Part shown: one piece after another, positions 1-64,000 of the stretch
Layout of the letters: every line of letters begins with the position of its first letter
Numbering within the stretch: position 1 is the first letter of the stretch
Assembly: GCF_006345805.1 (NCBI RefSeq)
Contig: NW_021832601.1
Span: 1-64,000, forward strand
Direction of reading: 5' to 3'
From: Octopus sinensis
Taxonomy: Eukaryota
Length of the DNA: 64,000 nucleotides
Position numbers and translations under genes: made by a program
The notes under the pieces: generated by a model
What the model was told of the DNA's origin: nothing
Database searches by the model: none
What the model saw: only the letters and a program-made list of their open reading frames with translations

Positions 1-345
1 TAAATACTCTAATGTTTGTACTAAATTTTATAGTTTAGTTTTCATTTATTTTTAAATAATTTTGACATTCTTTAGATAAAGTACATTATTGAATAAAAAA
101 ACTTTTGTTTTTATTGATACAATTGATTTTAATCACTTAATTATATAAGTACTTCTTTTGAAACCGAAAAAAACTAGCAGTTGATTTATTGAATTCGTCA
201 ATGTCATAAATTGATGGTTACAAAACCCAGATTATTGTTTTTATCAAACTTTAGATCTTGGATCGAATTTCTAAATCTCAATAATAAAACAACATGGTGT
301 GTGCGCATTAAATTCAAACTAGCAAAATACAGATGAATTGTCTAA
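1..345 (-). repeat. Diverged partial copy of dispersed repeat A (see 16612-17447)
   Basis: Reverse complement aligns by eye to about 16745-17060 (e.g. ctgggttttgtaaccatc, ttcaataaatcaactgctagttttttc, tttagtac..acatt.gagtattta). It is truncated by the window edge. Confidence 0.85.
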
Positions 346-539
346 ATCCTTTCCCCTTACTTCTTGCCCAAAAAAATTATTAACAGAAAATCGATTTGCT
401 ACAATTTTTACAATCTATAGAATCATAACTCAAAATTTTCTTCGAGTTGTCGGGATCAACTAATTAATTTACTTAATTAACTATTGGTGATTTTGAGTTA
501 AATAAAAAAACGACCTATCAAAAATTTGTAGGGAAACGT

Positions 540-7090: not shown

Positions 7091-8039
7091 CACAACTAGA
7101 TAACAAGTGTATATCCAGGAAATTGTATTTATGAAAATTTTGTCAAATTTACCATATCTATCTGGTTACGCTCTCTTGGAGCTTTTGCTTTAATGTTTAT
7201 TAAAGGAATATGTCCTTTTAACTTCGAGCACAGGCCACACATTCAGGCCAAAATATAGATCAATAAGTCAAAAGTGTTGGGTCAAAATGACGCTCGACAT
7301 TAAATATGTCAATAATTTAATTTTTTCAAAAAGTTGTTTCAGTTTGCAAATATCAACCTTTTAGAGCCAGAATCATTCATTATTATTTTTTTTCACCTTT
7401 GAAAGCTTTGGCACAGACTTTTTGGATGCTTAGTGTTTTCTTGCATACATTTTTTTGTCAGCATTATCCGAATACTCTTTTTCGATCGTCCAATTGGAGT
7501 TTTTAAATAATCTACAAAGGGATGGCTTCTCATCTTTAACATTGTAGACCTCTGAGAAGGAGCAATCCTGCGCCTCTCGTTGACTAAATATCCACAAATG
7601 AGTTTCGGTCCTGCACTATAAATTGTTTTGCTAACCTGGAAGTTGTTTTCATACTTTAGCTTTCATGAGGACTTGATAGTGTCCACTTCAAATTCACTCA
7701 ACACTTGAATAACATAGACTTAGATTGATTTATTGTCTGCGAGAGCGATGATGATTCTCTAGGCTACTTTCGGAGAAAGTGATCCTTTTCCTGATATCGT
7801 AAGTTAAGGTCGTCTTAAGGAATCCGGCGAACCCCGAAGTTTCAAATGCGACAGAGGCAGAGAGCCAATGGACCGCAAGAGTTTGGTATTTGTTGGTTTT
7901 CACGTGGTCCGCCTTGTGTTGTAGGTATACGACAGACCAGACTATATTCGAATTTAAGAACATCCGTACAGGTGGCACCCCACAACAGTGATCGGCCTTC
8001 GAGACTTAGAAGATTGCCATTCTGTTCGGTCTCTCGCAC

Positions 8040-8320
8040 TCACCATGGTCGAGGTCGGCTGGGTCGAGGATATAGGGGAACTCCGCAAGTTGGACTACGC
8101 GGAAAATACGCAGGTATTTCGTTCTCTTTAACTATTCGGCCTGAGCACTGGCTGCAAGTTTTGGGTAGCGTCGTCACCGAAAAAGAGTCGACGCAGGTGG
8201 CGTCCAAAACCAGAGACTTGCCTTCCCTGAAAGCAAAGATCGTCATCCCGTCAGGAATCTTACCGTCGCTCCGGAAAAGCCCAACAGGCTCTAGAGTGGA
8301 AGGGAAACCAGCCGACATGA
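8040..8320 (-). mobile_element. CRE-clade non-LTR retrotransposon endonuclease fragment
   Basis: [30 protein letters not shown] is the PD..D restriction-like endonuclease motif of CRE elements. Confidence 0.8.
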
Positions 8321-9089
8321 CAAAGAATAATCCGAAGACGAAATTAAATGATCATCAAAATTCATTCCACATACGTCTTCTTTAAAATCCAATTTTTTCA
8401 AATTTTTTTAATTCGAAAGTTATTTCAAGAAAGTAATAGTTACGTCAACTAGAAGTTAACAAAGCCATCCATTCAGAGTGGACCTTGCCGACATTATCGA
8501 CGTTGCGTTGCCTCTCACGATGGCAACAGAGATCAACTTGAGAAACCACCGGCTCTCACGTGAGTCGTGACTTTTTAATGTGGCTAAGCGTCCAAGCTTC
8601 TTTAGAAAGCCTCTCATTGGTTTGATTGGTTTAGAAGCCTCTCATATTTATCCTCGCAGATTGTCCTGTAACGGTCTTTCTGCTCAGGCATTGTCACCCT
8701 CGAATGCTCCATCTCTGTGATTTCAGATGATTCTGTTTGGAGTTGGAGAATCATCCTGATCAGCAGTCGGCTGGAGTCCAAAGAGGATAGGTATGCGGGG
8801 CAAGATAAATCTTTCGGTGAAGGGATTCCCAGTCCGTCCAGGTTTACGGGTAGGGTCGCTTAGTCCCACCCTTGGTCATCAAATTTCACATCGGTGATGC
8901 GTTTTTTGAGTAATTGAATGATATTGTTAATATATCTTGGCCTTGAGAGGAAAATTTATAAATTAGTTTTCTGCCAAAACTTGTTTTGTGAAAAATTAAC
9001 TGAATAATCGTAAAAATCGCAGAAACAAACTATTCAATATGAATTTTAGCTAAATTATCTAATTAGTAGTCAAAATAGTCCGTAATTTT

Positions 9090-10618: not shown

Positions 10619-13297
10619 ATGATTGTTTTCTTTATTTTGATTATTATATGTCATTCTCCAAAGTCTCGATTTACTATTTATGAAGAAAAACCTCCTGGAT
10701 CTTATGTTGGACAAATTTCTTTAAATTATCCCGACAATCACCATATTCCTTATCAACGAACAACTTATTCCCTAATGGAAAAAGCAGAATTTTTCCCATT
10801 TTCCATAGATATGAACACTGGAAAAATTTATACCAAAACAAAATTTGATTATGAAACTTTTTGTAAATCAGGATCAAACCTATGTGTGATTAAATCATTT
10901 GTTTTTGTTGAATCTACGAATGTTTCAAAAATAGTTCCAATTGAATTGATAATCCAAGATGTCAACGAATACTCACCTGATTTTGGAATAAAAGAAGTTG
11001 AAAAATCTATTGTAGAATGTTCCCCCATTGGATCTCGTGTCGTTCTCCCTTTAGCAGTCGATTTGGATGGAAGTTCTCAATACTGTATTAATGACTACAA
11101 ACTTCTCGCAGATGAAAATTTTCCTTTTAAATTAAAAATAACTCGAAGCCAAAGTCAGATTTCAAGAATTTATCTTGAACTGTTCGAGCCTCTGAATTTA
11201 AATAAGTTCAATAAATATTTTGGTTATGTCATTGCTCAGGATGGCGGGAACAAAACAGGAAAATTGAAAATTAAGATTTCAATATTTGATTGTGATTCAC
11301 ATAAACCAGTTTTTAGAAACTCACAAAAAAATGTGCATGTTTATGAAAATCTATCCATTGGATCAAAAATATCAGAATTCAACGCCTCAAATTTGTATGA
11401 AATAAAAAAAGTACCGATTTTTTATGAACAAAATTTTTTAAAAAACAGTGTTACTGCAAAAGAGCATCTAGGAATTGATGAAAACAGCGGAATTATATAT
11501 CTTAGAAAATCTTTAGATTTTGAAGAGGTAAAATTCTTCCAATTTTTTATTATTGCTTATCATGCAAACAATAAATTCGTTTATTCTGAGGCTATTCTCA
11601 ATTTATTCGTTCACAACTGTAATGACAACAGGCCTCAAATCGAAATTCAAGGAAAAATAAATAATGGTCTATTGTCATTAAATGAAAATACTCCAGTTGG
11701 AACAATTATTGCAAAAATTACGGTTTCTGATCTTGATGAAGAAGATATTTTTAATCTGACTTGTAATTACAGTGGTCCGGACTTTATTTCACTCAATAAA
11801 ATCAAAGACCAAATTAATGTGTTTTATTTAAAAACAGAACAAAGAATTGATTACGAAAAACAACATTTTTTATCTTGTGTGATTATATGTTCAGATAACA
11901 ACATAATTCAGCCATTAGAAACACTCAAAAACGTTTCAATTGCCATAATAGACGAAAATGATAATCCTCCAAAATTTGAAAAACAGTTATATTATTCTGA
12001 AATTTTTGAAAATTCACCTCCAAATACTTACATCTTATCCGTCAAAGCAACCGATGAGGATTCTGACCAACACGCTAAAATAACATACAAAATATATAAT
12101 GAACTGTTTTACATTTCGGAAGCTGGCGATATTTTTACAACCTCCTTTTTGGACCACGAAACGCATCCAGATATTGAGTTGATTGTTTATGCATACGATA
12201 TGAGTCATGATTTCCTATCTGACTCAGTAATGGTAAAGATAAAGGTTTTAGACGTTAATGATAATAATCCTGTTTTCCCATATACCAAAAATTATTTTCA
12301 TTTATCGGAAAATATGCCAGATGGTACTTTTGTAGGAAATGTGGTTGCATTTGATGTTGATTCTTCTTGTGATATTTTGAATTATTATATTGAGCCAGCT
12401 GATGTTCCATTCAGAATTGATTCTCATAATGGATTTATTTATTCAACTGAAATTTTGGATTCGGAAAAGATTTCAAAATATCAATTTAAAGTTGTCGCAA
12501 CCGATTGTGGACCAAATATTTTAAGTGCAAGTACCGATGTTGTTATTTTCATTGACGACGTTGAAGACAATCCAACAGTTCTTAAAATTTATGGAAATGG
12601 AAACAACATTATACATGAATCATTTATTGCTGATATTTGCACAGATAAAACAACAATTGCGACTGCAATTCTCGAAGACAAAGATTTGTCTCAAAAGTTA
12701 TATGCTACATACACCCTAAGTACGGATAGTCCCATGTTCACTATAAATAAACACACTGGAAAGATTAGGATTGAAAAAAAATTGAACAAGTACAACAATT
12801 CGATTTCTAAAATAACGATCTTTGCACATGACCAGGGAATTTTGTTTGAAAAATCTTTTAAAGTAATGATTAAAATAAATGAAACATGCTATAATATTAA
12901 CTGTGAGAACGAAACCAATAAAAATTTCATAAAAGCTTATCCGCATTTATATGGATGCCTGGGTGTTATTTTTTGTGGAATCATTGTCATTTTGATAATA
13001 TACAATAAACGAAGAAACACAATGAAATTACTTCCAAAACATAAACCACACGATAATCGAGAAATTGCATCAGAATTTTCTCCATTTCGCTGGTCTAATC
13101 CATCCCCGCTCTCCTACGATTTTTTGAAAGAAAATTCTATAATTCAAGACGAATTAAACAGCAATTATTCATTAGTTGACAACATAAAATTAATTTCCCA
13201 TGACGATTCGTGCAAATTATGTGATTTGATACGGCTGAATTCAAATTATGTTTTTATCAATTGTCATTGTAATCATGAATCGAACTCTAAGCGTTGA
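10619..13297 (+). CDS. Protocadherin-like protein, 892 aa, single exon: signal peptide, 7 cadherin repeats (last degenerate), TM helix, short cytoplasmic tail
   Basis: Repeated E.xP.G, DxD, LDxE/DYE and DxNDNxP motifs; Cys pair in EC1 (CKSGSNLC); PLAVDLD in EC2; hydrophobic LGVIFCGIIVILIIY. Confidence 0.9.
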   Translation: MIVFFILIIICHSPKSRFTIYEEKPPGSYVGQISLNYPDNHHIPYQRTTYSLMEKAEFFPFSIDMNTGKIYTKTKFDYETFCKSGSNLCVIKSFVFVESTNVSKIVPIELIIQDVNEYSPDFGIKEVEKSIVECSPIGSRVVLPLAVDLDGSSQYCINDYKLLADENFPFKLKITRSQSQISRIYLELFEPLNLNKFNKYFGYVIAQDGGNKTGKLKIKISIFDCDSHKPVFRNSQKNVHVYENLSIGSKISEFNASNLYEIKKVPIFYEQNFLKNSVTAKEHLGIDENSGIIYLRKSLDFEEVKFFQFFIIAYHANNKFVYSEAILNLFVHNCNDNRPQIEIQGKINNGLLSLNENTPVGTIIAKITVSDLDEEDIFNLTCNYSGPDFISLNKIKDQINVFYLKTEQRIDYEKQHFLSCVIICSDNNIIQPLETLKNVSIAIIDENDNPPKFEKQLYYSEIFENSPPNTYILSVKATDEDSDQHAKITYKIYNELFYISEAGDIFTTSFLDHETHPDIELIVYAYDMSHDFLSDSVMVKIKVLDVNDNNPVFPYTKNYFHLSENMPDGTFVGNVVAFDVDSSCDILNYYIEPADVPFRIDSHNGFIYSTEILDSEKISKYQFKVVATDCGPNILSASTDVVIFIDDVEDNPTVLKIYGNGNNIIHESFIADICTDKTTIATAILEDKDLSQKLYATYTLSTDSPMFTINKHTGKIRIEKKLNKYNNSISKITIFAHDQGILFEKSFKVMIKINETCYNINCENETNKNFIKAYPHLYGCLGVIFCGIIVILIIYNKRRNTMKLLPKHKPHDNREIASEFSPFRWSNPSPLSYDFLKENSIIQDELNSNYSLVDNIKLISHDDSCKLCDLIRLNSNYVFINCHCNHESNSKR

Positions 13298-14220: not shown

Positions 14221-14984
14221 CTAAAAGTATATATTAGTTGATCAATAGACTATTAATAAACTCCAAGTGAGAATTAATTAAATTATTTATTTTATTTAGC
14301 GTCACTTTATAATAATTAAAAAAAATTAAGATCCGAAAGACAATAAAAATAGATACCAAATTCCCACGGTTGTTTATAGAAAGACTTAAAAACGACAGAA
14401 AAAACTAACGGATAAATGTTAACATTGCTCTTTTATATGGGATCCAAGCCCGGGTCTCTACGAAGATACACGATCATCTCTACACCTGCTGTTTGTTCTA
14501 AAGGGTTACACATGAAATCTTTCACGCTAATTTTGAGCTGGTTGGATAATGCTTTGAGTAGGATAAATTATCTGTAAAAAAAATTTATTAAAATCAAACA
14601 AAAATAAACTGACAATTAATTAAAAATAACCTGCTAATGGAATTAAGTCGATTTATCCTATTTTTATCAATTTTTTGATTGAATAAATTTTACCAAAAGT
14701 CGGTAAAACAGACATCACCAATTTTTTAATCATTAGCGTATTTTATTGAATTCTACATTTTTTAGGTTTTTTGCAATTAAAAACAAGTACATTTTTAAAA
14801 TCAATTAATTCTATTATGAGGGAAAAGGGCACCTGCGGTTGCATGATGGAGTGTGGATTGCCGCGAACTACAGCTATTCCGATTTGCTGGAAAAATCATG
14901 ACACTTCCGAGGCTCCCAACGTCGCATAGTAGCTTTTCCTCAGACTTCTTTGATGAAAGATTTGTTAGAGAATAAGTTACCCCA

Positions 14985-16610
14985 GATGTTTCCACAGCGA
15001 TGGGGATAAAACGATACTGTTGTCCAAGATTAGCATATTAGGCAATCAAGCAAACAGCCGAAGATGCGATGTGGAATACACGATGTTTGTTTTTTAGGTG
15101 TCAACATACGTTGAATCCCAAACCAGAGATGAGATTTCCCGCAGGAGTAAGGAAAGGTGGTCATCCCATCGGGTCTGTTCCCATTTCCACGGAGCATTAT
15201 CTTGTGTAAGAGACCCACTGGCTCTAGCACTGAGGAGAAGCCTCAAGATAACATTGTTGAGAGCGGAGTCTCGAGGAACTCGCCCAGCACTTCGTTTGCA
15301 AGAGAGTGGGTGGACATCTTTGACGTCAACCGTTTTTCCACATCTGCAACAATGTTGTTCGCAGATGTCAAGTCCGAGTTTCAGTTCGGTACAGATGCGC
15401 ATGCAGTCATCCTTTAATAATGCTTTGAGGTCAGCAATTGACATGGTACAGCTCCATAGCATAAACAGGCGAGGCGATGTTGGTCGACTCATTGCAAAGT
15501 TGTCTGAGGTGGATTTTCAACGTAAATTGTCCAAGCTCCGTAGATATGATGTTTGGAGTGGGAATTTTAATCCTGATTACTTCCACAGCATACATCCATC
15601 TTCAAAAAGCTTGTCCAAAGAAGATTCTGGGATTTATGTGGAATCTCTAAAGATACCCATTGGCAGGATGGGTGAGAGGACAGAAAGGTCGGGAAGGCAA
15701 AGTCCAGAGAAAATCTCAGGCCAGCTCCGCCATAATTAAGCGGTAGTTTACATTAAGTCTACCAATCACAATCTCAACGTATTATCGATAGAATGCAATG
15801 TTTCATCTTGTATATAGCAGAACAAGCATCTCAGTAAGTATAATAATTTGATGACGTGGATGCAATTTTTGAGGAAGAAAAGACCGTGTAAAAGTCAAGT
15901 AGAGAGAGGCGTTCAGAAAACGTGACATTTCGGCACACTTAGCTCGAAGGCAGTTTTGCAATTCGAACTCCCCGAAAGGACACCCGATTAAATAAACATC
16001 ATTGAGGTGTGTTTGTTTTGTGCCTGCCAAGATTTCCGAAATATTCTCTATTACTAAGCCAAAGTCGAGACTAAGATATTTATGATCTCAGTTTTTTTGG
16101 TGTTGACTATCAGCTCCATTTTTGCCTGAGCAGGAACTTTAAATAACTTATCCAAGGCGACATCAACAAAGCCCCTAATAGTGGCATCGTCGAGGTACCA
16201 GAGATTGAAAGGTGTCTTAATAATACGAGCCAGCTTGTCGATCGACATATCAAATAGTAAAAGTCCAAGAGGGTCCACTTGTTGGACTCCAGTCCGGAAA
16301 CGGACAATGTGTTTGTCAAAGAGAAGCGAACTTTCAGACCCGTAAGCAAGATGAGCCAGTCTCATGATCTCAGGCGTACGCCGTGAGACGATTCCAACAA
16401 ACAGCCCCTCCTCAGACTGTTCAACGCGTTTAAGATATCTAACTTCACGGAGAAGGTATTTGGGGAATGCCTTGTGTCAGGTGAAAAAAAGTCCCTGTCG
16501 CGTGGACAGCGGCTTCACATCCTTTGGAAACAGCAACTCCCAGTTGAGCTGAAGATAATTTAGCAGCAACACGGGGACAGACTCTTCTGGCTGCAATTTT
16601 GCATGCGAGC
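14985..16610 (-). mobile_element. Degenerate CRE-clade non-LTR retrotransposon (RT, CCHC finger, RLE)
   Basis: QLGVAVSKGCEAAVHA; GVQQVDPLGLLLF; WYLDDAT; CRCGKTVDVKDVHPLSCKRSAGRVPRDSALN; EPVGL..RPDGMT. Many stops and frameshifts. Confidence 0.85.
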
Positions 16611-16611
16611 C

Positions 16612-17447
16612 TATCAAAAACCTCATCATCAAGGATATTCTTGATATGTTAGATTTTTAGATGAAAGGTTCTTGGAAGACCTAACCATTTTTTAGCTTGT
16701 ACTCTATTATTTGCTAATTTGAATACTTTAAAATCTGTTAGGATTTTTTACAATTCATCTGTATTTTGCTAGTTTGAAGTTAGTGCGTAAACACATAATA
16801 CCATTTTATTATTAAAATTTAGAAATTCGCTCCAAAATCTAAAATTTGATAAAAACAGTAATCTGGGTTTTGTAACCATCGACTAATGACATTGAAGAAT
16901 TCAATAATTTGTCAATAAATCAACTGCTAGTTTTTTTCAATTTAAAAAAACGTTAGTTTTCTTATTTAATATTGTACTTTATGTAAAGAATATCAAAGCT
17001 ACTTTAAAAATAAATTATAACTAAAGTACAAAATTTAGTACGAACATTGGAGTATTTAAGTAAATTTTCGATCAAATAATAAATTATGTGTTTATTCGCC
17101 ATATTCATTTGTGTTTTTGTTTTTAAAAGTTACCAGTCTCCAATATCATCGGATGATGCGGCAAATCAGATAGTCGGAAAATTAATTATTAATTTTATAG
17201 GTAGAACATGAAATTATATTTCCTAATTTAAACCCACTTAGTATTTATTAATTTTTCTATTGTTAGAGTCAGAATTTATCTTCAGACAAGGACCTCAAAG
17301 TAAGATAGAAAAACACAATTTCTATTTAGACGACCGCTTTTATGAAGATAATTATAGTGAAAATAATCATGTACGGTGATGAAAGTTACATGATTTTTAT
17401 ACTAAATCGATTCATCCTTTATTAATAAAAAAACTAATTAACTATTT
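16612..17447 (+). repeat. Dispersed repeat A, 836 bp, containing a cryptic multi-exon reading frame
   Basis: Near-identical to 30597-31432, with diverged copies at 1-345 (-) and about 57030-57175 (-). GT-AG introns at 17060-17129, 17173-17200, 17241-17266 and 17300-17329 join into a stop-free frame. Confidence 0.9.
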
Positions 17448-17481
17448 TTTTTACAATTAACGCTGAAATTGGCAAATACAG

Positions 17482-17711
17482 TAGTTATTAACTAACTAAA
17501 TTCCCGGCCTCGTAAATGGAAACACAGTTTCCACGTACTATAGCCAAGGAAATCCTTTCGAGAAGCCACTTGGACTCGCGTGGGTCTCCCCGTTTATGGG
17601 AAATCATGTGGCCAAGCTTTTTCAGAAAGGAAAGAGACTTTTCGCCGATGACGCCGGAAGTCTCGACGGCGATGGGAGTGAACAGATACCGTTCAGAGAG
17701 CTCCTTGTCGC
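17482..17711 (-). mobile_element. CRE retrotransposon 3' fragment
   Basis: [42 protein letters not shown]; almost identical to the part of 33667-34220 ending near 33895 and to 29740-29950. Confidence 0.9.
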
Positions 17712-17974
17712 GATGTCGTGTCTTATTTTGAAATGGCGATATCGTGTCTGACTTTTCAGAAAACAAAATATAGAAATAGACTACGGGTACAAGATGATAT
17801 AAGATTAGCTTTGTCAAACATAGATCCTGAAATAAGTAGAATTATTCTGAACAAACAAGAGCAGAAATCTCACTGAATTACTGCTAAATTGTCTGTTATT
17901 TTGGTAATTTTCGTGTTATTTTCATACAATAAATAGTCGAACATGTCTAACCTAAAAATTTTATTTTATTTTAG

Positions 17975-18039
17975 GTGATCCCCGCAAAATTTTATAGAGC
18001 AAAAGTGGTCCCCAGTCTAAAAAAGGTTGAGAACCTCTG
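17975..18039 (+). mobile_element. hAT 3' terminus remnant
   Basis: Ends in aaaaaggttgagaacctctg, a Charlie/Buster-type terminal sequence, with agtggtcccc subterminal motif. Confidence 0.55.
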
Positions 18040-18081
18040 ATATGGATTATATTAATTTTGTTTAATTAAAAAGTATATTAT

Positions 18082-19922
18082 TAGGGCAACCAAAAAATTG
18101 CACTTTTTAATAAAAAAAATTGCAAAAATGAATTTTAAAAATTGTAAAAAATTGCAAAAATAATTTTTTTTAATTGTAAACATTACATTATGCAAAAAAT
18201 TAACGAAATTATTTATTGTAATAGGAAATCAAATATTCCTGAACATTTTCAGGTTTAAAGTTCCTCTCTTTACTAAGAATTTTCGTCAAAAGAGATATTG
18301 CCCTTTCGATAGATGCTGAACTTGCGCTACATTTTCTGAGATGTGAATAAACTTCTGGCGATAGATTCTTATTTGAGAATTCAAGAATACTTAGTATTCC
18401 TGATTTCTCAAGCTTTTTTGATATATAGGATTTTATGTCGCATGGATCTGATGTAAAGTCTAGGGTGTTTAGATCACCATAAGCTGTTGCAATGGAGTAA
18501 TCAAGCAATTCAGTATTTGAAATCATTTCAATTAATCCCAAATAATTTGAACTGATTTGGGTTAAGCTTGGAAACAACGTAGGATTATTCACTGATTTTT
18601 TTGCCTAAAATAATTAAAAACTAAAACATTTTGTATTAAAACTCCATCTCCTTCAAATTCAGATACGATTTTAATAATTTCTGGAAGATTCTGGGAGTAA
18701 TATTTTGCTGCTTTTAGCCAGCTTCCCCATCTTGTAACCACAACTTCGGGTGGATTTCCGATTCGTGAAAACATCTCCAAACGTCTCTTGTTTTTGACTG
18801 TGGCAGCCTTTATAGACGAAATCAATTCATCAACATCTGCGAAGTATGCCTTAATCTTTAGAGCACAGTTGTGCAATAAATGTGACACGCAAGTCACGTG
18901 GAAAAGATTTTGGTATATCAATTTCATTGATGCCCCAGCTAAAATTAAATGTATTTATATATACCACTGGTCATATATCTCGCCCCATCTGTAACGAATA
19001 ATATAAAATTTTCACGTTCAATAGAAAATTTCTTTATTACTTGTCCACCTCAACACAAATTGTTGAAGTAGTAGGCGGATAATATAGATTGGTACACGAT
19101 ACTAAATGAAGATTTTTTGGAGTGGAGATTTTCCCAATCAAAGTAATTAAAAAACGAGTTCCATTGATTTGGGCTTCATCACAAACAAAAAAAACACATT
19201 CCCCACTATTGAATAACTTAAAAAAAACAACAGTAAATGAGTCTGAATGGTATTAATTTATATTTTGATATTTCTTAACATTTAACCTGCAAGATGATTC
19301 AGATGGCAAAGGATATGTTTCCTGCTCAAAAAGCCGTATGAGGGAAGGATGTCTGATTTTATAAATTGGTATGTTTGCCTCCAAAAACGCTTGTTTACTT
19401 TGATCCCCCAATCCTTCGAGTATCCGTTATCGCCGAAAGAAATGTTTGTGAACTCTGAGATGAATTTGTCCATTCTATAAATTTAAATTCAAAGAAAACT
19501 GTGTGCTTTTAAATGTTTTTTTGAAGAACGGTGCGCATCAACAAAAAATTTTGTGTCACACCGTACAACAGTTGAGCAATTGGAGCAAAATAAATTCCCT
19601 TCACTGTCAATAACAAACTCGGGGAATTTCTTTGCATAAAATGAAATTTTCTGTGACACTGTCCTTTTACCCATTACAACAAACACTAAAACACGTTTTA
19701 ATAATCTTTTACTTATAATTATATTATTTTTTAATAAAAAAATTTTTTTTTTAATTTAAAAAATTGCAAAAAATTGTAAAATGACTACAAAAAATTGCAA
19801 AAAATTGCAAATTTAAATCGAATAAAAATATAATTAAAATTAATGTCTATTCATTACTTTATTATTTATCGAATTTTAATTAAATTATATTTAATTGCAA
19901 AAAATTGCAATTGGTTGCCCTA
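18082..19922 (-). mobile_element. Complete hAT transposon (1841 bp) with CGGBP1-like zinc finger transposase; intron-containing and frameshifted
   Basis: 12-bp TIR TAGGGCAACCAA/TTGGTTGCCCTA; exact 8-bp TSD TATATTAT (18074-18081, 19923-19930); aaattgcaaaa subterminal repeats. Motifs FCSNCS..H..SKKH, FVTDGARYM, FHVTCVSHLLHNCA, TRWGSW and SASIERAIS. Confidence 0.92.
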
Positions 19923-29557: not shown

Positions 29558-29739
29558 TACAAGAAACAAATCTAGCACGCTAAAAATTTTCCAATAAGTT
29601 TAAATTTACCAACATTTAAAAAAATAACTTTTTTAAATTATTTAAGTACATGAACAAAAACTAATTTAAATCAATACAAGGCATAGTTAAACTTTATAAT
29701 TGGCCCATAAAAAATATTAGTTGTGATAATCAAAGGATT

Positions 29740-29986
29740 GAACGGTATCTGTTCACTCCCATCGCCGTCGAGACTTCCGGCGTCATCGGCGAAAAGTCTC
29801 TTTCCTTTCTAAAAAAGCTTGGCCGCATGATCTCCCATAAACGGGGAGACCCACGCGAGTCCAAGTGGCTTTTCGAAAGGATTTCCTTGGCCATAGTACG
29901 TGGAAACTGTGTTTCCATTTACGATGCCGGGAATTTAGTTAGTTAATAACTATTTGTTAATTACATATAACTTTTACCAAAAAAAA
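29740..29986 (+). mobile_element. 5'-truncated CRE insertion with poly(A) and 12-bp TSD
   Basis: CRE 3' coding end, 3' UTR and A-tail (29979-29986), flanked by AATCAAAGGATT at 29728-29739 and 29987-29998. Confidence 0.9.
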
Positions 29987-30596
29987 AATCAAAGGATTTA
30001 ATTTTGACATCTACAAGGTCAAAAAAATGTAACCGGTTGCCCATGCGTAACGCGTTGCCCATGTCACATAGTATTTAGGGGTGCAGAGGATAAAGTTTAG
30101 ATTTTTAGGGGTGTCGAGAAAGAAAAGGTTTGGGAAACCTTGCAATATAGGTTTGACTGCACTTTAAAATCTGCTAACTGCACTATCAAGTGGTATTTTG
30201 AAATCTGCTAATCAGACATGAAAACTGGTCGAATCCGCTGTATAAACTGGATACCCTTTAACCCTACTCGCATATTAATAATTTATTTTAGATGAATGTT
30301 TTTTTATTTAAATAGGTACTTTAAAATTTGCTAATTACACTGTCGAGGTGGACTATGATAATAGTCTTAATGTTGATTAATTGTTGGCATTTGTTTTGAA
30401 AGTGAAAATCCAAGGATGAATTGAATTTCTTTGCCACCAATAATTGGGTGCACACTATTGGGAGTATTCTTGCTGTCGTTTTTATTAACATGTTGAAAAT
30501 AATTCTTTAATTTTTTTCCTATAAAGTTTTAATGTATCTCATAATAAGAGTCGTGGACATTCACGTTGTTTATTTTAACCAAAATACAGAAAATAT

Positions 30597-31432
30597 TATC
30601 AAAAACCTCATCATCAAGGATATTCTTGATATGTTAGATTTTTAGGTGAAAGGTTCTTGGAAGACCTAACCATTTTTTAGCTTGTACTTTATTATTTGCT
30701 AATTTGAATACTTTAAAATCTGTTAGGATTTTTTACAATTCATCTGTACTTTGCTAGTTTGAAGTTAGTGCGTAAACACATCATACCATTTTATTATTAA
30801 AATTTAGAAATTCGCTCCAAAATCTAAAATTTGATAAAAACAGTAATCTGGGTTTTGTAACCATCGACTAATGACATTGAAGAATTCAATAATTAGTCAA
30901 TAAATCAACTGCTAGTTTTTTTCAATTTAAAAAAACGTTAGTTTTTTTATTTAATATTGTACTTTATGTAAAGAATATCAAAGCTACTTTAAAAATAAAT
31001 TATAACTAAAGTACAAAATTTAGTACGAACATTGGAGTATTTAAGTAAATTTGCGATCAAATAATAAATTATGTGTTTATTTGCCATATTCATTTGTGTT
31101 TTTGTTTTTAAAAGCTACCAGTCTCCAATATCATCGGATGATGCGTCAAATCAGATAGTCGGAAAATTAATTATTAATTTTATAGGTAGAACATGAAATT
31201 ATATTTCCTAATTTAAACCCACTTAGTATTTATTAATTTTTCTATTGTTAGAGTCAGAATTTATCTTCAGACAAGGACCTCAAAGTAAGATAGAGAAACA
31301 CAATTTCTATTTAGACGACCGCTTTTATGAAGATAATTATAATGAAAATAATCATGTACAATGATGAAAGTTACATGATTTTTATACTAAACCGATTCAT
31401 CCTTTATTAATAAAAAAACTAATTAACTATTT
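30597..31432 (+). repeat. Dispersed repeat A, second full copy
   Basis: Colinear with 16612-17447, with scattered substitutions; the four intron boundaries are conserved. Confidence 0.9.
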
Positions 31433-31565
31433 ATTGCCTAACTAAGTATTAAGTCTTCGGAGTGAACAAGTGATGACACTCCATAAATGTTCTTCCCTTC
31501 TTATTCCTCTTTCTGCTCAAACAACACAGAGTGAATAGATTTGTTTGAAATTTTTTTAATAGATA
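31423..31565 (+). repeat. 143-bp direct duplication B, copy 1 (copy 2 at 34222-34364)
   Basis: ttaactatttattgcctaactaagtattaagtcttcggagtg...ttttttaatagata is near-identical at both sites. Confidence 0.92.
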
Positions 31566-32027: not shown

Positions 32028-33666
32028 CAGTGGGGCAAATAAGTCATGGCACACCTATCATTTTTTTTAATTCAATATATTTTTACAAAAATAACTTTTT
32101 CGATTTAGTTCATCATGCTACACAATAAAATCTTGCATTCTTTTGAACCCATTTCGTGCTAATTATATTCATGAATTTCAAATAAATATAATTGTTTTTG
32201 CTTCATATTTAGAAAAATGTCAAATTTGATGTGTAAAAAAGTGATGACACTATCAAAAAATATGGATTTTTTTGACAATAAGATACAAATGATTATCTTT
32301 TGGTGCCTTGTTTTTTCTTTGAAATAATTGATTCTTAGTTCTATTAATATAATTGATTAGTAGATTCCGATTAGTATAAATATACTTTTATTTTTCGCCT
32401 TTTATTAAAATTATCTCGTCGATAAGGAAAGAGCATTCTTTGGACCTAAAACAACGAGTTGTAACTGCCCACCAAAACGGTAAAAGTTATGGAGAGATTT
32501 CTAAATTGTTGATATTACCAAAAAGTACTGTTCGAAATATTATTACTCGATGGAAGCAACGCGGAACTGTTATTAATAAACCAGGATCGGGTGCTCCAAA
32601 AAAGATATCTCTGCGTTTTTCTTCATTAATGAAAAGATTAGTTACTTCAAACCCAAAAATAACTCGAAAAGAATTTGCCGATAATTTAAAAATCACAGGA
32701 ACGTCAGTGTCCCTTCGTACAATCACTTCTACACTACGCAAAGAAGGTATCAATAAGCGAAGGCCCCGTCGAGTTCCGTTATTAAAGAAAATACACCTTT
32801 CAGCGCGAATCCAATATGCAAAAAATCTTTTGAACAAAGAAAATGAATTCATAAACAATATTTTGTGGTCGGACGAATCAAAAATACAACTTTTCGGACT
32901 GAACTACACGCTTTCAATTTGGCGCAAATCAAATCAGGCGTATATCCCAAAATGCACCATACCTACCGTAAAGCACGGGGGAGGTAGTATCATGTTGTGG
33001 GGCTGTTTTTCATCAACAGGTGTTGGTGAACTATTTGTAATTGATGGAATAATGAATTCTCTTAAATATTGCGAAATTTTGGAAAAATGTCTTTTACCTT
33101 CGGTCGCGAACTTAAATTTGACACAACATTGGGCATTCCAGCATGACAACGATCCTAAGCACAAGTCAAAAGTAACCGTTAAATGGTTAGAAAAAAACAA
33201 AATAAATGTTTTGGAATGGCCAAGTCAATCGCCAGACCTGAATCCCATCGAAAACTTATGGAAAATATTAAAAATAAAAGTTGGCTTAAGAAAACCAAAA
33301 AATATCCAGGAATTAAAAACAATTTGCTACGAAGAATGGAAAAATATTTCTAAAGTAGAATGTCAAAAACTAATTTTTTCTTACAAAAAACGATTGGAAG
33401 CAGTTCTGCTAGCAAAAGGGAATGCAACTAAATATTAATTGGATTTCGTGCCATTACTTTTTCCCTCAAAAAATTGATTTTAAAAATAAATCGTTAATTA
33501 GTGCACTATTAATAATTCCCTTTAAGATAGTTTTTTTAATAATTTATCTAAAAAGTTCTATATTACTAATTTATTTTTTAAAGTAATGTATTTAATAATT
33601 TTTTTGCAAAGAATTGTTAAATTTAGTCAAAATTTGCAAAGGTGCCATGACTTTTTTGCCCCACTG
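32028..33666 (+). mobile_element. Full-length Tc1 (DD34E) transposon, 1639 bp
   Basis: 27-bp TIR CAGTGGGGCAAA(T/A)AAGTCATGGCACCT with TA on both sides. Inner repeats resembling the TIR near 32236 and 33445 suggest an IR/DR layout. Confidence 0.95.
32413..33438 (+). CDS. Tc1 transposase, open frame but no ATG at the expected start (ATC at 32413)
   Basis: WSDESK, FQHDNDPKH and SPDLNPIENLW with 34 residues between D and E; paired-like HTH N-terminus; no internal stops. Confidence 0.9.
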   Translation: MSSIRKEHSLDLKQRVVTAHQNGKSYGEISKLLILPKSTVRNIITRWKQRGTVINKPGSGAPKKISLRFSSLMKRLVTSNPKITRKEFADNLKITGTSVSLRTITSTLRKEGINKRRPRRVPLLKKIHLSARIQYAKNLLNKENEFINNILWSDESKIQLFGLNYTLSIWRKSNQAYIPKCTIPTVKHGGGSIMLWGCFSSTGVGELFVIDGIMNSLKYCEILEKCLLPSVANLNLTQHWAFQHDNDPKHKSKVTVKWLEKNKINVLEWPSQSPDLNPIENLWKILKIKVGLRKPKNIQELKTICYEEWKNISKVECQKLIFSYKKRLEAVLLAKGNATKY

Positions 33667-34220
33667 TAGTTATTAACTAACTAAATTCCCGGCCTCGTAA
33701 ATGGAAACACAGTTTCCACGTACTATAGCCAAGGAAATCCTTTCGAGAAGCCACTTGGACTCGCGTAGGTCTCCCCGTTTATGGGAAATCATGTGGCCAA
33801 GCTTTTTCAGAAAGGAAAGAGACTTTTCGCCGATGACGCCGGAAGTCTCGACGGCGATGGGAGTGAACAGATACCGTTCAGAGAGCTCCTTGTACTTTCC
33901 AATCTTCTCGGTTTTGCGAGAGACTGAGCCAGCCTCGACAGCTGAGAAGGAAGGTTAAGCTCCGAGAAAGTGTCTGAATACGTCGCATCCCATAACAGAG
34001 ACTTGCCGAACTCAAATGGGAAAGTAGATAGGCCGTCGGGTCTTTTTCCGTCTCCCCTCGCAAGCCCAACGGGTTCGAGGATTGATGGAATTCCAGCGGC
34101 CGTGAGCCCCCTCTGAATAACGTCGTTAAGTGCTGCATGGCGTGGTGCGCGCCCTGCACTGCGACGACAGGAAAGGGGATGTAGACCAAAACGGTCAATG
34201 ACAGCACCACAACGACATTT
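33667..34220 (-). mobile_element. 5'-truncated CRE retrotransposon (zinc finger and RLE), well preserved
   Basis: [70 protein letters not shown]. Confidence 0.9.
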
Positions 34221-34221
34221 G

Positions 34222-34364
34222 TTAACTATTTATTGCCTAACTAAGTATTAAGTCTTCGGAGTGAACAAGTGATGACACTCCATAAATGTTCTTCCCTTCT
34301 TATTCCTCTTTCTGCTCAAACAACACAGAGTGAATATATTTGTTTGAAATTTTTTTAATAGATA
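34222..34364 (+). repeat. 143-bp direct duplication B, copy 2
   Basis: Near-identical to 31423-31565. Confidence 0.92.
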
Positions 34365-35120
34365 CAGTAAACTCTCTAGAATCTGCCAATTCTTATATTT
34401 GCCAATTCTGAAATTCGCCATTTTTTATCGATTCTTTCTACTTTTCAATGATATTTGCCAATTCTGAAATTTGCCACAATTTTTGAAAATTCTCTTTATT
34501 AATTAAAAAAATTTTTTTAATTGAAAAAAATAAAAAGAATTTAAAGCAAGCATGGTCCGCACTGTTCCTGTTGGAAGCTACTCTAGACTTACAATTGCTC
34601 AAAAAGTGGAAATATTGCGTTACAAAGAAAGTAATAAGTCTGCTTCATGTCAGACGATTTGCAGCAGATTTTCTACAATCTTTAAAAAGACAATCTCAAG
34701 AAGACAGACAATCTTTATTGAAAATAGATTAATTTTGTTATTAATGGATAATTGCCCATCCCATTGACCGCTTCTTTATTTGGAAAATATTAAAATAATG
34801 TTTATTCCAAAATACAGTACAGGGCTTATTCAGCCAATGGATCTGGGCATTATAAAAACGTTCAAAGTACATTTTACACGACACAAATTACTTTATTTAA
34901 CGGATATATTGGAATGTGAGAAATAGTCAGTCTATGAATCGTATAAAAAGTTAACTCTTAGAGATACTGTATTGTTTGTAAAAATGGCATGGGAAGATGT
35001 GAAATCTCAAACGATTTCAAACTTTTTCAAACGTCTAAAATGTACAGAATGTGAACCACAACTTCTTAACATAAATATACCAGCTGACATTATAAGCAAA
35101 ACAGATATTTATGATCCAAC
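34365..35120 (+). mobile_element. Internally deleted pogo/Tigger element, 3' end lost
   Basis: TA|CAGTAAACTCTC terminus; gccaattctgaaatt repeats; RLTIAQKVEIL (HTH), LLMDNCPSH, IQPMDLGIIKTFK and AWEDVKSQTISNFF. Confidence 0.8.
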
Positions 35121-35149
35121 AAAAGTCCCGTACGACTCCAGTTTGCTTA

Positions 35150-42414: not shown

Positions 42415-42515
42415 GTCAATTATGAAACTAAATTCGTTATTTATTGTGATTAGCTTAACGGGTTTATGTAATAGGTGTAATAGACTAAATCTTAATAATA
42501 AAATGGTATGGTGTG

Positions 42516-42516
<1 letters not shown>

Positions 42517-42552
<36 letters not shown>
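42517..42552 (+). repeat. (GTCT)9 microsatellite
   Basis: Direct reading. Confidence 0.95.
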
Positions 42553-42554
<2 letters not shown>

Positions 42555-42578
42555 GTGTGCACACCAACTTCAAATTGG

Positions 42579-56804: not shown

Positions 56805-57077
56805 TTATTTACTATACAGCATTTTTACAAAATCTAAAAATAACCAAAATAATAAACCATCAACATTTAAACGTCCATCCTTATTAATATCGTTTTCAGT
56901 AATCAACACGTCTATTTCCTCGTCAGTAATATCTATCCCAATATCGTTTAGTAAATCTTTCAGTTCAACTTTATTGATGAATCCGTTTCCATTTGTGTCG
57001 AATTGAGAGAAAGCGTTTTGAATTGAAAACTGTTTACTCGTAAATATAAAAAAACTGAATAGAGTAAATAAACGCAT
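56805..57077 (-). CDS. Calmodulin-like protein, only one EF-hand pair visible; 5' structure uncertain
   Basis: AFSQFDTNGNGFINKVEL and ENDINKDGRLNVD|DFVKML, with a 24-nt intron before the last exon. Confidence 0.7.
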   Translation of the reverse strand: MRLFTLFSFFIFTSKQFSIQNAFSQFDTNGNGFINKVELKDLLNDIGIDITDEEIDVLITENDINKDGRLNVDGLLFWLFLDFVKMLYSK

Positions 57078-57568
57078 TATTTTTTGATCAGCAATATACT
57101 TAAATACTCGAATGTTTGTACTAAACTATGTCCTTATGTTTTCATAGTTTTTCTTAAAGTAAGTTTGACCTCTAATTTATTTGGTCTATTTCTTTTAAAA
57201 AATAAATTAACACTCCTTATCTCATCAAACGTGGCAAACATGTGAAATAACTCTCTAATCACGCACATCCCAAAGCCCGGAAAACAAATAAGTGATTTTT
57301 CTTCTTGCGTCCGGTCAAAAGTACCAAAAAACTTATGATAATGTTAATTTTCCATGCTCTACAATTTCCGTATTTTCCAACATGGCTTTAGATCTGGCCG
57401 TCTTAAAGACAAATTTTGGATCTGTCTTTCAAAAAATTACTTTCTTGATGCTCATTGATATGTGAAAAGTCTTTGACCCAACCATGATTAGTATTTGTGC
57501 ACTAATGATTGTACTGTAAAAATGAAACAAAATTATCAAGGAATAGAAAAATATTAGGCAAATTTAAT

Positions 57569-62590: not shown

Positions 62591-62799
62591 TGCTAAAGTG
62601 TGATTGATCTTGTTGTGCCATTTTATCCAGTCCAAACAATTGTTTTTTTTCTCAATTATCCATGGCCGTTTGTTCTGTATGTAAAATATTCAGTCCGCAT
62701 TTTTTCATCTCTCCCGTGTGGGGTTTTCTAAGGTTTGCTCTTTTTTAATTCATAACTGGAAGTGCCAAGGATGTCTTGTGCCTTCCATTAACCTTTGTT

Positions 62800-63833: not shown

Positions 63834-64000
63834 AGCTTTCAACACTTTACCGAATTCTTTTTTCGTAATAAACTAATCACCCCATTAATTAAACCGATCA
63901 ATCAAAGTAAATGCAGGATAAGCATCCAATTGAACGAGTCAACTGACATTTCTAATGTCTGTCAGCAGGTGTCCTATGTTTGCCTTTTTGATCATGTAAA

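What the first reader, a model, noticed from the sequence alone, without database searches (positions are those of the whole stretch)
16612..17447. Dispersed 836-bp repeat hides a micro-intron-split reading frame of unknown family
The repeat has no ORF in the six-frame track. Removing four GT-AG introns (70, 28, 26 and 30 nt) gives a stop-free peptide TNIGVFNYQSPISSDDAANQIVEHEIIFPNLNPLKSEFIFRQGPQNDRFYEDNYSENNH with consistent phases. The second copy (30597-31432) keeps all splice sites. The older copy at 1-345 shows conservative changes in an upstream segment (NSLQNLKFDKNSNLGFVT vs NSIQDLKFDKNNNLGFVT). There are four copies in 64 kb, no TIR or RT is visible, and two small hairpins lie at the left end. 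It could be an expanded lineage-specific gene family or a gene fragment carried by an unclassified mobile element.
Basis: partly seen in the sequence, partly recalled or inferred. Interest (0 to 1): 0.75.

Follow-up and report, generated by a model that had tools for sequence, protein, structure and literature searches.

The report
Local duplicate carrying unproven mini-gene
An 836-bp stretch, duplicated 14 kb apart on what looks like a dicyemid-parasite contig inside an octopus genome assembly, may hold a small orphan gene with two 26-28-nt introns, but nothing yet shows that the gene is real, and the repeat's ends look like breakpoints rather than the ends of a mobile element.

Summary
The repeat is real. 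c1 (16612-17447) and c2 (30597-31432) differ at 15 positions (98%). An older inverted copy lies at 1-350 and a 148-bp fragment at 57022-57169.

The window is the first 64 kb of a contig of the Octopus sinensis assembly. Its genes carry validated 20-34-nt GT-AG introns, a dicyemid hallmark, so micro-introns are plausible here.

Its first exon has no start codon.

It has introns of 28 and 26 nt, 79 codons, a TGA stop and AATAAA 45 nt downstream. This ATG and its hydrophobic leader align with the start of a real EF-hand gene (56805-57077, minus strand).

Support for the model is suggestive only: p about 0.02 from the fixed ATG, good splice-site scores, and 3-4 synonymous against 3 nonsynonymous changes. 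No protein homologue exists, and codon usage is inconclusive.

The left 36 nt of the repeat are reverse-transcriptase coding sequence of an adjacent truncated LINE. The right end abuts another LINE. No transposon hallmarks were found. I read it as a trimmed local duplication carrying a candidate orphan gene. Interest is modest.

The parts
16612..17447 (+). Repeat copy c1, the finding itself
   Evidence: BLAST and MAFFT against c2: 98.1% identity, 15 substitutions, no indels.
30597..31432 (+). Repeat copy c2
   Evidence: The left flank is a diverged unit of the 94-bp satellite. The right flank is segment X.
1..350 (-). Old copy c3. It covers c1 positions about 16740-17058 and is cut by the start of the contig.
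   Evidence: nhmmer 7e-44 and 5.7e-14. Alignments. 71% identity including indels.
57022..57169 (-). Fragment c4: 93 nt upstream plus about the first 19 codons of the EF-hand gene. It is homologous to c1 16993-17144.
   Evidence: BLAST 73% over 154 nt. nhmmer 6e-15. Alignments. No homology beyond the block.
16612..16648 (-). Leftmost 36 nt of the repeat. On the minus strand they read HIKNILDDEVFD, in frame with the RT N-terminus of LINE B.
   Evidence: Frame translation. tblastn of the RT homologues P0003 and P0001 reaches 16645 and 16621.
14830..16648 (-). LINE B: a 5'-truncated, frameshifted non-LTR retrotransposon (RT motif YLDDAT, C-terminal IPIAVETSG tail).
   Evidence: The lower end is approximate.
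16744..16755 (+). Left copy of the 12-nt direct repeat TTTTTTACAATT. It sits where homology to c3 begins.
17447..17458 (+). Right copy of TTTTTTACAATT. It sits immediately after the c1/c2 homology ends.
17034..17063 (+). Most conserved block of the family (TTTAGTACRAACATTNGAGTATTTAAGTA), with a TATA-like TATTTAAG 31 nt upstream of the ATG. A promoter role is inferred.
   Evidence: Four-way alignment.
17086..17172 (+). Candidate exon 1: ATG plus hydrophobic leader, MCLFAIFICVFVFKSYQSPISSDDAANQI.
   Evidence: Spliced-path search (DP). The ATG aligns with the ATG of the EF-hand gene, with an in-frame 3-nt indel.
17173..17200 (+). Candidate intron 1, 28 nt, GT-AG
   Evidence: Its PWM score falls in the top 14-19% of composition-matched pseudo-introns and at the median of real introns.
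17201..17240 (+). Candidate exon 2
17241..17266 (+). Candidate intron 2, 26 nt, GT-AG
   Evidence: Its PWM score falls in the top 2-3% of composition-matched pseudo-introns.
17267..17379 (+). Candidate exon 3, ending in TGA.
17424..17429 (+). AATAAA, 45 nt after the stop codon. The repeat ends about 17 nt further on.
   Evidence: There are four AATAAA on this strand of the element, so this is weak evidence.
17478..17708 (-). LINE A: 3' terminal 231 nt, 5'-truncated. It bounds c1 on the right.
   Evidence: 99% identical to 33663-33893 and 97% to 29739-29952. Tail peptide tblastn.
31432..31565 (+). Segment X, the continuation of c2. It is 99% identical to X' at 34222-34364, which abuts the 5' end of a 555-bp LINE A copy (33667-34221) and begins with the last 10 nt of the repeat (TTAACTATTT).
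56805..57077 (-). Real EF-hand-pair gene. It gives 82 aa after removal of a 24-nt intron, and it shares its promoter-proximal block and leader with the repeat.
   Evidence: Pfam EF-hand_7 9e-17.

Best explanation
The '836-bp element' is the surviving part of a recent local, DNA-level duplication, about 2% diverged, in a repeat-rich region of a dicyemid-type genome. It is not a transposon with ends of its own.

Its left boundary lies inside the RT coding sequence of a 5'-truncated LINE. Both copies share that sequence, so the LINE was already there when the segment was copied. In c1 the right boundary is where another LINE fragment abuts. In c2 the sequence simply continues into segment X.

Inside lies an older core of about 700 bp (from about 16740), which is also present as copy c3. 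The core consists of:
- a conserved promoter-like block;
- an ATG and a hydrophobic, signal-peptide-like leader, which also head a real EF-hand gene elsewhere on the contig;
- a lineage-specific 79-codon frame split by two introns of 28 and 26 nt, the typical size for this genome;
- a stop codon and a polyadenylation signal.

The most likely reading is a taxonomically restricted small gene for a secreted or membrane-anchored protein, or a very young dead copy of one. On this reading it arose by reuse of the 5' module of another gene and multiplied by segmental duplication.

Shown: the repeat, its boundaries, the micro-intron habit of the genome, and the homology to the 5' end of the EF-hand gene. 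Inferred: transcription, splicing, translation, secretion, and the order of the rearrangements.
For: - Genome context. Micro-introns of 20-34 nt are validated: the spliced Lon protease aligns without gaps to human LONP1 at 8.5e-160, and other genes show the same. The contig belongs to the O. sinensis assembly. Among animals, introns under 30 bp are reported only from myxobolids and Dicyema (PMC13644364), and D. japonicum is 49% repeats (PMC6736024).
- Boundaries. RT homology runs 34-36 nt into the repeat. LINE A abuts c1. c2 continues into X, which recurs at 34222 next to a LINE A 5' end with a TSD-like TTAACTATTT.
- No transposon hallmarks. No TIR and no tRNA or Rfam match.
- Gene model. From the fixed ATG 17086, at least 79 codons with at most 2 micro-introns occur in 1.7% of same-composition random sequences.
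- The ATG and leader are homologous to the start of a Pfam-supported EF-hand gene, with an in-frame indel.
- Intron PWM scores fall in the top 14-19% and top 2-3% of composition-matched pseudo-introns.
- Candidate exons are 25-33% GC against 15-18% for the candidate introns.
- Between c1 and c2 there are no changes in the candidate introns or splice sites, the frame is intact in both, and 3-4 synonymous changes stand against 3 nonsynonymous (P about 0.04-0.2).
Against: - The unconstrained spliced-ORF score of the element (202) is among the lowest in the window and is matched by 64% of random sequences.
- Codon-usage log-odds (-0.02 bits per codon) lie between real genes (+0.05) and non-coding paths (-0.07). 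21% of non-coding paths score as high.
- The candidate CDS has diverged more between c1 and c2 (2.9%) than the rest of the repeat (1.3%).
- No homologue was found for any frame or for the spliced product in 5.8 billion protein clusters, in 1.84 billion representatives for exon 3, in Pfam or in the PDB.
- No gene is on record at c1 in the assembly's gene calls.
- The ATG was chosen after seeing the data.
- ORFs in AT-rich DNA are GC-enriched by ascertainment.
- The 12-nt direct repeat TTTTTTACAATT at 16744 and 17447 is not explained by a plain segmental duplication.
- c1 lacks X beyond its LINE A fragment, so further rearrangements must be assumed.
Confidence: 0.5

Rival explanations
1. The element is non-coding repetitive DNA. 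The 79-codon spliced frame is a chance product of AT-rich sequence in a genome where GT...AG pairs of 20-35 nt are everywhere. The similarity to the EF-hand gene exists because that gene recruited a 148-bp fragment of this repeat as its promoter-proximal region, start codon and hydrophobic leader (exaptation of a repeat).
For: - Spliced paths as good as this one arise in 64% of random sequences and 87% of window tiles.
- There are no homologues.
- Codon usage is inconclusive.
- The CDS is not less diverged than its flanks.
- c4 is a short internal fragment with unrelated sequence on both sides, as expected of a repeat fragment.
- T-rich DNA encodes hydrophobic residues in any frame.
Against: - Starting from the one ATG that is homologous to a real start codon, the long frame has p about 0.017.
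- Both frame-restoring introns score like real introns.
- The indel in the leader is in frame.
- A stop codon followed by AATAAA lies close to the end of the unit.
Confidence: 0.3
2. The core (about 16756-17446) is a non-autonomous retroposon copied by the LINE machinery from a polyadenylated or read-through transcript. The copies would share a fixed 3' end about 17 nt after AATAAA and differ at their 5' ends. TTTTTTACAATT would be the 12-bp target-site duplication of the c1 insertion.
For: - A perfect 12-nt direct repeat lies exactly at the start of c3 homology and at the end of c1/c2 homology. Only 0.33 occurrences are expected per window.
- AATAAA lies 17 nt before the end.
- Related LINE fragments (LINE A, three copies 97-99% identical to one another) are abundant and lie next to the repeat.
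- c1/c2 and c3 begin at different 5' points.
Against: - No poly(A) or simple-repeat tail at either copy, and no TSD around c2.
- c3 also carries a diverged version of the left 12-mer, so the 12-mer looks like part of the unit rather than target DNA.
- c2 includes 131 nt of c1's left flank, including the LINE B sequence.
- The candidate introns are retained in c2, which argues against copying from a spliced mRNA.
- There is no tRNA, 7SL or 5S head.
Confidence: 0.12
3. One reading: a five-exon frame with introns of 70, 28, 26 and 30 nt, being a gene fragment carried by an unclassified mobile element such as a Helitron-like or MITE-like element.
For: - The peptide is reproduced exactly and c2 keeps all the sites.
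- Both copies start TC after an A and contain CTAA followed by T near the 3' end, with an AT palindrome (TTTATTAATAAA) just upstream.
Against: - The first exon has no ATG and an in-frame stop 5 codons upstream.
- At 70 nt the first intron lies outside the 20-60-nt range of the introns called in this window's genes (mode 26-29 nt), and it contains the conserved ATG.
- There is no GC-rich 3' hairpin and no TIR.
- The two right flanks share the same 10 nt, which independent insertions would not.
- The left end continues the reading frame of the neighbouring LINE.
Confidence: 0.05

Closest known systems
Dicyemid protein-coding genes with ultra-short spliceosomal introns (Dicyema japonicum genome, Lu et al. 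2019, PMC6736024; survey in PMC13644364)
   Same: GT-AG introns of 26-28 nt. AT-rich introns between slightly GC-richer exons. A compact gene with a short upstream region. A repeat-rich genomic setting.
   Different: No homologue, no transcript evidence, and only 79 codons. Membership of the expressed gene set is untested.
Taxonomically restricted (orphan) small secreted-protein families that keep a conserved 5' module or signal peptide and vary the mature part, such as conotoxin superfamilies and schistosome micro-exon genes (from my own knowledge, not tested here)
   Same: A conserved upstream block plus a hydrophobic leader is shared between two otherwise unrelated coding bodies (the EF-hand pair and the orphan peptide). 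Copy number grew by local duplication.
   Different: Only two kinds of 'mature' part and three or four loci are visible. Secretion was not tested. No hypervariability or positive selection can be shown from 15 substitutions.
Segmental duplications trimmed by later transposon insertions
   Same: Two 98% identical copies 14 kb apart. The boundaries fall inside or against LINE fragments. Neighbouring pieces (LINE A, X) are also duplicated at 97-99%.
   Different: A 12-nt direct repeat flanks the old core in c1. A plain duplication does not predict this.
LINE-mobilised non-autonomous retroposons (SINE-like elements or processed retrocopies)
   Same: LINE relatives lie next to the repeat. A TSD-like 12-mer is present. 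The end lies just after AATAAA. The 5' starts vary.
   Different: No poly(A) or LINE-derived 3' tail, no pol III head, and the introns are retained. The second copy has no TSD.

Membership tests
Spliceosomal micro-intron of the dicyemid type | GT...AG termini | tested here: met
   All candidate introns in c1 and c2.
Spliceosomal micro-intron of the dicyemid type | Length within the genome's own distribution (about 20-34 nt, mode 26-29) | tested here: met
28 and 26 nt (and the optional 30 nt) against 46 training introns from this window.
Spliceosomal micro-intron of the dicyemid type | Splice-site context like that of real introns | tested here: inconclusive
   PWM scores of 1.75 and 4.21 fall within the real-intron range. 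14-19% and 2-3% of composition-matched pseudo-introns score as high.
Spliceosomal micro-intron of the dicyemid type | Removal observed in RNA | not testable with these tools
Protein-coding gene | ATG-to-stop frame after splicing, intact in both copies | tested here: met
   79 codons in c1 and c2.
Protein-coding gene | Frame longer than chance allows | tested here: inconclusive
   p about 0.017 from the fixed ATG. The unconstrained path is matched by 64% of random sequences.
Protein-coding gene | Purifying selection between copies | tested here: inconclusive
   7 substitutions in the CDS. 3 codons changed synonymously, 2 nonsynonymously, and 1 is a double change. P is 0.04-0.2.
Protein-coding gene | Host-like codon usage | tested here: inconclusive
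   -0.02 bits per codon, between coding (+0.05) and non-coding (-0.07).
Protein-coding gene | Detectable protein relatives or domains | tested here: not met
EF-hand protein family | EF-hand loop or Pfam EF-hand match in the 79-aa product | tested here: not met
   No Pfam match at E <= 1. Only the 5' flank and leader are shared with the EF-hand gene.
DNA transposon / MITE | Terminal inverted repeats and a TSD of family-typical length | tested here: not met
   No terminal inverted repeat. The flanks of c2 show no duplication.
LTR retrotransposon (the two copies as LTRs) | TG...CA ends, a flanking 4-6-bp TSD, and gag-pol between the copies on the same strand | tested here: not met
   The ends read TATC... 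and ...TATTT. The flanks GAGCC and ATTGC differ. The interval holds unrelated genes and transposons.
SINE / LINE-dependent retroposon | Pol III head (tRNA, 7SL or 5S) | tested here: not met
   ARAGORN found 0 and Rfam found none.
SINE / LINE-dependent retroposon | Poly(A), simple-repeat or LINE-derived 3' tail | tested here: not met
   The ends read ...AACTATTT followed by unrelated flanks.
SINE / LINE-dependent retroposon | Target-site duplication at each copy | tested here: inconclusive
   A 12-nt direct repeat is present at c1 only, and it is partly present in c3 as well.
Helitron | 5' TC, 3' CTRR preceded by a GC-rich hairpin, insertion at A|T, independent flanks | tested here: not met
   TC and CTAA can be found, but there is no GC-rich hairpin. 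The 10 nt after CTAA are identical in both copies. The 5' end continues the LINE reading frame.

The most novel reading that the evidence does not exclude
Dicyemids may possess a family of very small secreted proteins. In it, a conserved promoter plus signal-peptide module would be shuffled onto unrelated mature parts (here an EF-hand pair and a 60-residue orphan peptide) and then amplified by local duplication. That would be module shuffling and de novo gene birth in the animal genome with almost the shortest known introns, possibly tied to the parasite's life in the octopus kidney.
Probability: 0.15. Interest if true: 0.5.

Novelty: new member of a known kind. Interest (0 to 1): 0.3.

Why it matters
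If the mini-gene is real, it would be a lineage-specific secreted-peptide candidate in a little-studied parasite. It would also be a small example of a 5' module (promoter, start codon, leader) reused by two unrelated coding bodies.

More practically, the work shows two things:
- This contig of the Octopus sinensis assembly behaves like dicyemid DNA, which matters to anyone using that assembly.
- In genomes with 20-30-nt introns, a 'stop-free after removing GT-AG segments' argument has almost no evidential value unless it is anchored to an independent start site.

If the frame is chance, the finding is an ordinary low-copy duplicate in a transposon-rich region.

Tried and rejected
- Exact-product look-ups for window ORFs all returned nothing: the 41-aa ORF of the element, the UBX/PUB ORF, the protocadherin-like ORF, the EF-hand ORF and the Tc1 transposase from its first ATG. 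I could therefore not fetch more of this genome to count copies. Only P0005 revealed the contig.
I searched exon 3 alone and found 0 hits.
- A concatenate of the spliced product and all long frames of the element gave no hit at E <= 10.
- A metagenome scan for the conserved core found 0 matches.
- LTR-pair reading rejected: wrong ends, no TSD, unrelated interior.
- Helitron and MITE readings rejected (see the membership test).
- I tested whether the downstream part of the element is a decayed EF-hand CDS. Smith-Waterman against shuffles shows no residual similarity.
- I tested whether the satellite left of c2 continues into the repeat. It does not.
- Codon-usage log-odds trained on seven window genes discriminate too weakly to decide.
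- A weak Rfam mir-76 match (23 bits against a gathering score of 75) and a CRISPR-DR match at the left end were treated as noise.
- I could not derive a single consistent history for c1, c2, LINE A, X and the Tc1 insertion. The TSD-like TTAACTATTT fits one LINE A insertion into an '836-X' site, but the 3' flanks of the two LINE A copies differ.

Full report
**1. The observation**

The repeat is real. BLAST of 16401-17700 against the window finds a second copy at 30597-31435 (839 nt, 98.1%, same strand). It also finds a diverged inverted copy at 1-350 and a short inverted fragment at 57022-57168. nhmmer with a c1/c2 profile finds the same four places and no others.

A pairwise alignment with flanks puts the shared segment at 16612-17447 and 30597-31432. 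The two copies differ by 15 substitutions and no indels. No ORF in the element exceeds 41 aa from a start codon, or 45 aa stop to stop.

They reproduce the quoted peptide exactly, and c2 keeps every splice dinucleotide.

**2. Where the window comes from, and why micro-introns are not absurd**

One window protein (P0005, a PUB/UBX protein) is on record on contig VCDQ01004829.1 (169,060 bp) of GCA_006345805.1, at coordinates identical to the window's. The window is therefore the first 64 kb of that contig. That accession is the Octopus sinensis assembly.

The contig's genes, however, are split by GT-AG introns of about 20-34 nt:
- The PUB/UBX gene needs one 26-nt intron.
- A TPR gene, a Lon protease, a lipoyl synthase, a WD40 gene and others need many.
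- After removal of these introns, the Lon product aligns to human LONP1 at 8.5e-160 with no gaps at the junctions.

[quoted passage not shown] D. japonicum has a small, 36.7% GC genome that is 49% repeats (PMC6736024). Dicyemids live in cephalopod kidneys. I conclude by inference that this is a dicyemid contig within the octopus assembly.

**3. Is the spliced frame more than chance?**

I wrote a dynamic-programming (DP) search for the best stop-free path that allows GT...AG introns.

With introns of 20-35 nt and a 20-nt penalty per intron, the element scores 202 on the plus strand and 133 on the minus strand. Markov-1 random sequences of the same composition average 234, and 64% reach 202 or more. 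Of 839-bp tiles across the window, 87% score at least 202, so the element is among the poorest. The existence of a stop-free spliced path therefore carries no weight.

The 'conservative' difference NSLQNL.../NSIQDL... is four nucleotide changes, three nonsynonymous and one synonymous. That is the neutral expectation. It sits in a 31-codon stop-to-stop frame without a Met, flanked in the old copy by 2-nt and 11-nt indels.

**4. A better model, and an unexpected anchor**

It uses only the 28-nt and 26-nt introns and ends at TGA 17377-17379. The product is 79 aa:

MCLFAIFICVFVFKSYQSPISSDDAANQIVEHEIIFPNLNPLKSEFIFRQGPQSKIEKHNFYLDDRFYEDNYSENNHVR

AATAAA follows 45 nt after the stop, and the repeat ends about 17 nt later.

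The fragment c4 turned out to be the 93 nt upstream plus the first 19 or so codons of a real gene on the minus strand (ATG 57077, one 24-nt intron, stop at 56805). That gene encodes an 82-aa EF-hand pair (Pfam EF-hand_7 9e-17). Its ATG aligns with 17086. The hydrophobic leaders correspond (MCLFAIFICVFVFKSYQS against MRLFTLF-SFFIFTSKQFS) with an in-frame 3-nt indel. The most conserved block of the whole family (TTTAGTACRAACATTNGAGTATTTAAGTA, containing a TATA-like TATTTAAG) lies 23-52 nt upstream of the ATG. Outside this 148-bp block the two loci are unrelated.

**5. Tests of the revised model**

- From a fixed ATG, at least 79 codons with at most two micro-introns arise in 1.7% of same-composition random sequences.
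- I built a splice-site weight matrix from 46 introns of this window and scored the two candidate introns. They score 1.75 and 4.21 bits. That is within the real-intron range, and it is reached by 14-19% and 2-3% of composition-matched pseudo-introns.
- Candidate exons are 25-33% GC and candidate introns 15-18%. ORFs found in AT-rich DNA are GC-enriched by ascertainment, so this is weak.
- Codon-usage log-odds are -0.02 bits per codon, between real genes (+0.05) and non-coding DP paths (-0.07). 21% of non-coding paths score as high.
- Between c1 and c2, seven of the 15 substitutions fall in the 240-nt CDS and none in the 54 nt of introns. Three codons changed synonymously, two nonsynonymously, and one doubly (R to Q). 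An excess of synonymous change has P = 0.04-0.2, depending on transition bias.
- No protein resembles the product. A concatenate of the spliced product and all long frames found nothing at E <= 10 among 5.8 billion clusters. Exon 3 found nothing among 1.84 billion representatives. Pfam and the PDB gave nothing. No further paralogue exists in the window.

Taken together the gene is plausible but unproven. I put it near 45%.

**6. What the repeat unit is**

On the minus strand the first 36 nt of the repeat read HIKNILDDEVFD. This is in frame with RLACKIAARRV..., the N-terminal RT motif of a frameshifted, 5'-truncated non-LTR element (LINE B, about 14830-16648). RT homologues align into the repeat as far as 16645. 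c2 carries these 36 nt too, but a diverged satellite unit replaces the rest of the LINE. The copied segment therefore already contained the LINE junction, and its left end is a breakpoint.

On the right, c1 is followed by 30 nt and then the 3' end of another LINE (LINE A, 17478-17708). Other LINE A copies lie at 33667-34221 and 29739-29952. c2 instead continues into segment X (to 31565).

X recurs at 34222-34364 (99% identity), directly against the 5' end of the 555-bp LINE A copy, and it begins with the last 10 nt of the repeat, TTAACTATTT. This looks like the two junctions of one LINE insertion, with a 10-bp target duplication, into an '836-X' sequence, with c2 as the empty site. The flanks of the two LINE A copies differ, however, and a Tc1 element sits at one junction. 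I could not reconstruct a single history.

The old copy c3 shares only the part from about 16740 onward. The ancient core is therefore about 700 bp, and the first 131 nt of the '836-bp element' are c1-specific flank.

There is no TIR, no LTR-type end, no poly(A) tail and no tRNA-like head.

One feature remains unexplained. A perfect 12-nt direct repeat, TTTTTTACAATT, lies at 16744, where c3 homology starts, and at 17447, where c1/c2 homology ends. It could be a target-site duplication of a retroposed core, a microhomology junction, or the start of a lost tandem copy.

**7. Verdict**

The finding is a real, young, low-copy local duplicate in a transposon-rich stretch of a probable dicyemid contig. 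Its ends are rearrangement breakpoints, not transposon termini.

It contains a candidate three-exon orphan gene. The candidate's start and leader are shared with a bona fide EF-hand gene, but its expression, splicing and selection are all unproven.

Interest is modest. It would rise if transcript data showed a family of small leader-sharing secreted proteins.

Noticed in passing
window 1-64000 (= VCDQ01004829.1:1-64000 of GCA_006345805.1): The contig is filed under the Octopus sinensis assembly, but its conserved genes (Lon protease, lipoyl synthase, TPR, WD40, PUB/UBX) are split by 20-34-nt GT-AG introns. Among animals this trait is reported only from dicyemids and myxobolids. It is probably parasite (dicyemid) DNA inside the host assembly.
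   Followed up: partly
14830-16648, 17478-17708, 29739-29952, 33667-34221, 61401-64000, about 7400-8700: The non-LTR retrotransposon fragments are 43-51% GC in a contig averaging 33.5%. They carry an unusual C-terminal '...IPIAVETSG...RESxWLxERISLAIVRGN' tail. Three copies of one of them are 97-99% identical, which implies recent activity or duplication. Their origin (native or acquired from the host) was not tested.
   Followed up: partly
32028-33666: An apparently intact Tc1/mariner element. It has 22-nt terminal inverted repeat matches (1 mismatch), a TA target duplication, and an uninterrupted 332-codon transposase frame (the 32440-33438 ORF as listed; its first ATG is at 32629) with HTH_Tnp_Tc3_2 and DDE_3 domains. 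It is inserted at the 3' end of a LINE A copy.
   Followed up: partly
56805-57077 (minus strand): A small gene for an 82-aa EF-hand pair with a hydrophobic, signal-peptide-like N-terminus and one 24-nt intron. It lies about 490 bp downstream of the Lon protease gene. A secreted or membrane-anchored two-EF-hand protein would be unusual.
   Followed up: partly
42582-43653; diverged units at 30340-30596: A 94-bp satellite of 11.4 copies at 93% identity. Diverged units form the left flank of repeat copy c2. A (TGTC)n run lies just upstream at 42512-42558.
   Followed up: no
16744-16755 and 17447-17458: A perfect 12-nt direct repeat, TTTTTTACAATT, lies exactly at two independently defined homology boundaries of the repeat. 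It is unexplained: it could be a target duplication, a microhomology junction, or the remnant of a tandem copy.
   Followed up: partly
16612-16690 (minus strand): A hairpin spans the junction between the LINE B 5' end and the adjacent sequence (-22.3 kcal/mol, z = -3.2). One arm is an inverted near-copy of the first 15 or so nt of the LINE fragment. Only a sub-threshold Rfam mir-76 match was found.
   Followed up: partly
10619-13297: A single-exon 892-codon protocadherin-like ORF (six cadherin repeats, Cadherin_2 N-terminus, a transmembrane segment) in an organism that, if it is a dicyemid, has only about 30 cells.
   Followed up: no
17709-19700 (minus strand) and 34363-35200: Remnants of a hAT-like transposase (ORFs at 18209-19686) and of a pogo/Tigger-like element. 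The latter starts TA|CAGTAAAC right where the X' homology ends. Both are nested among the duplicated pieces.
   Followed up: no
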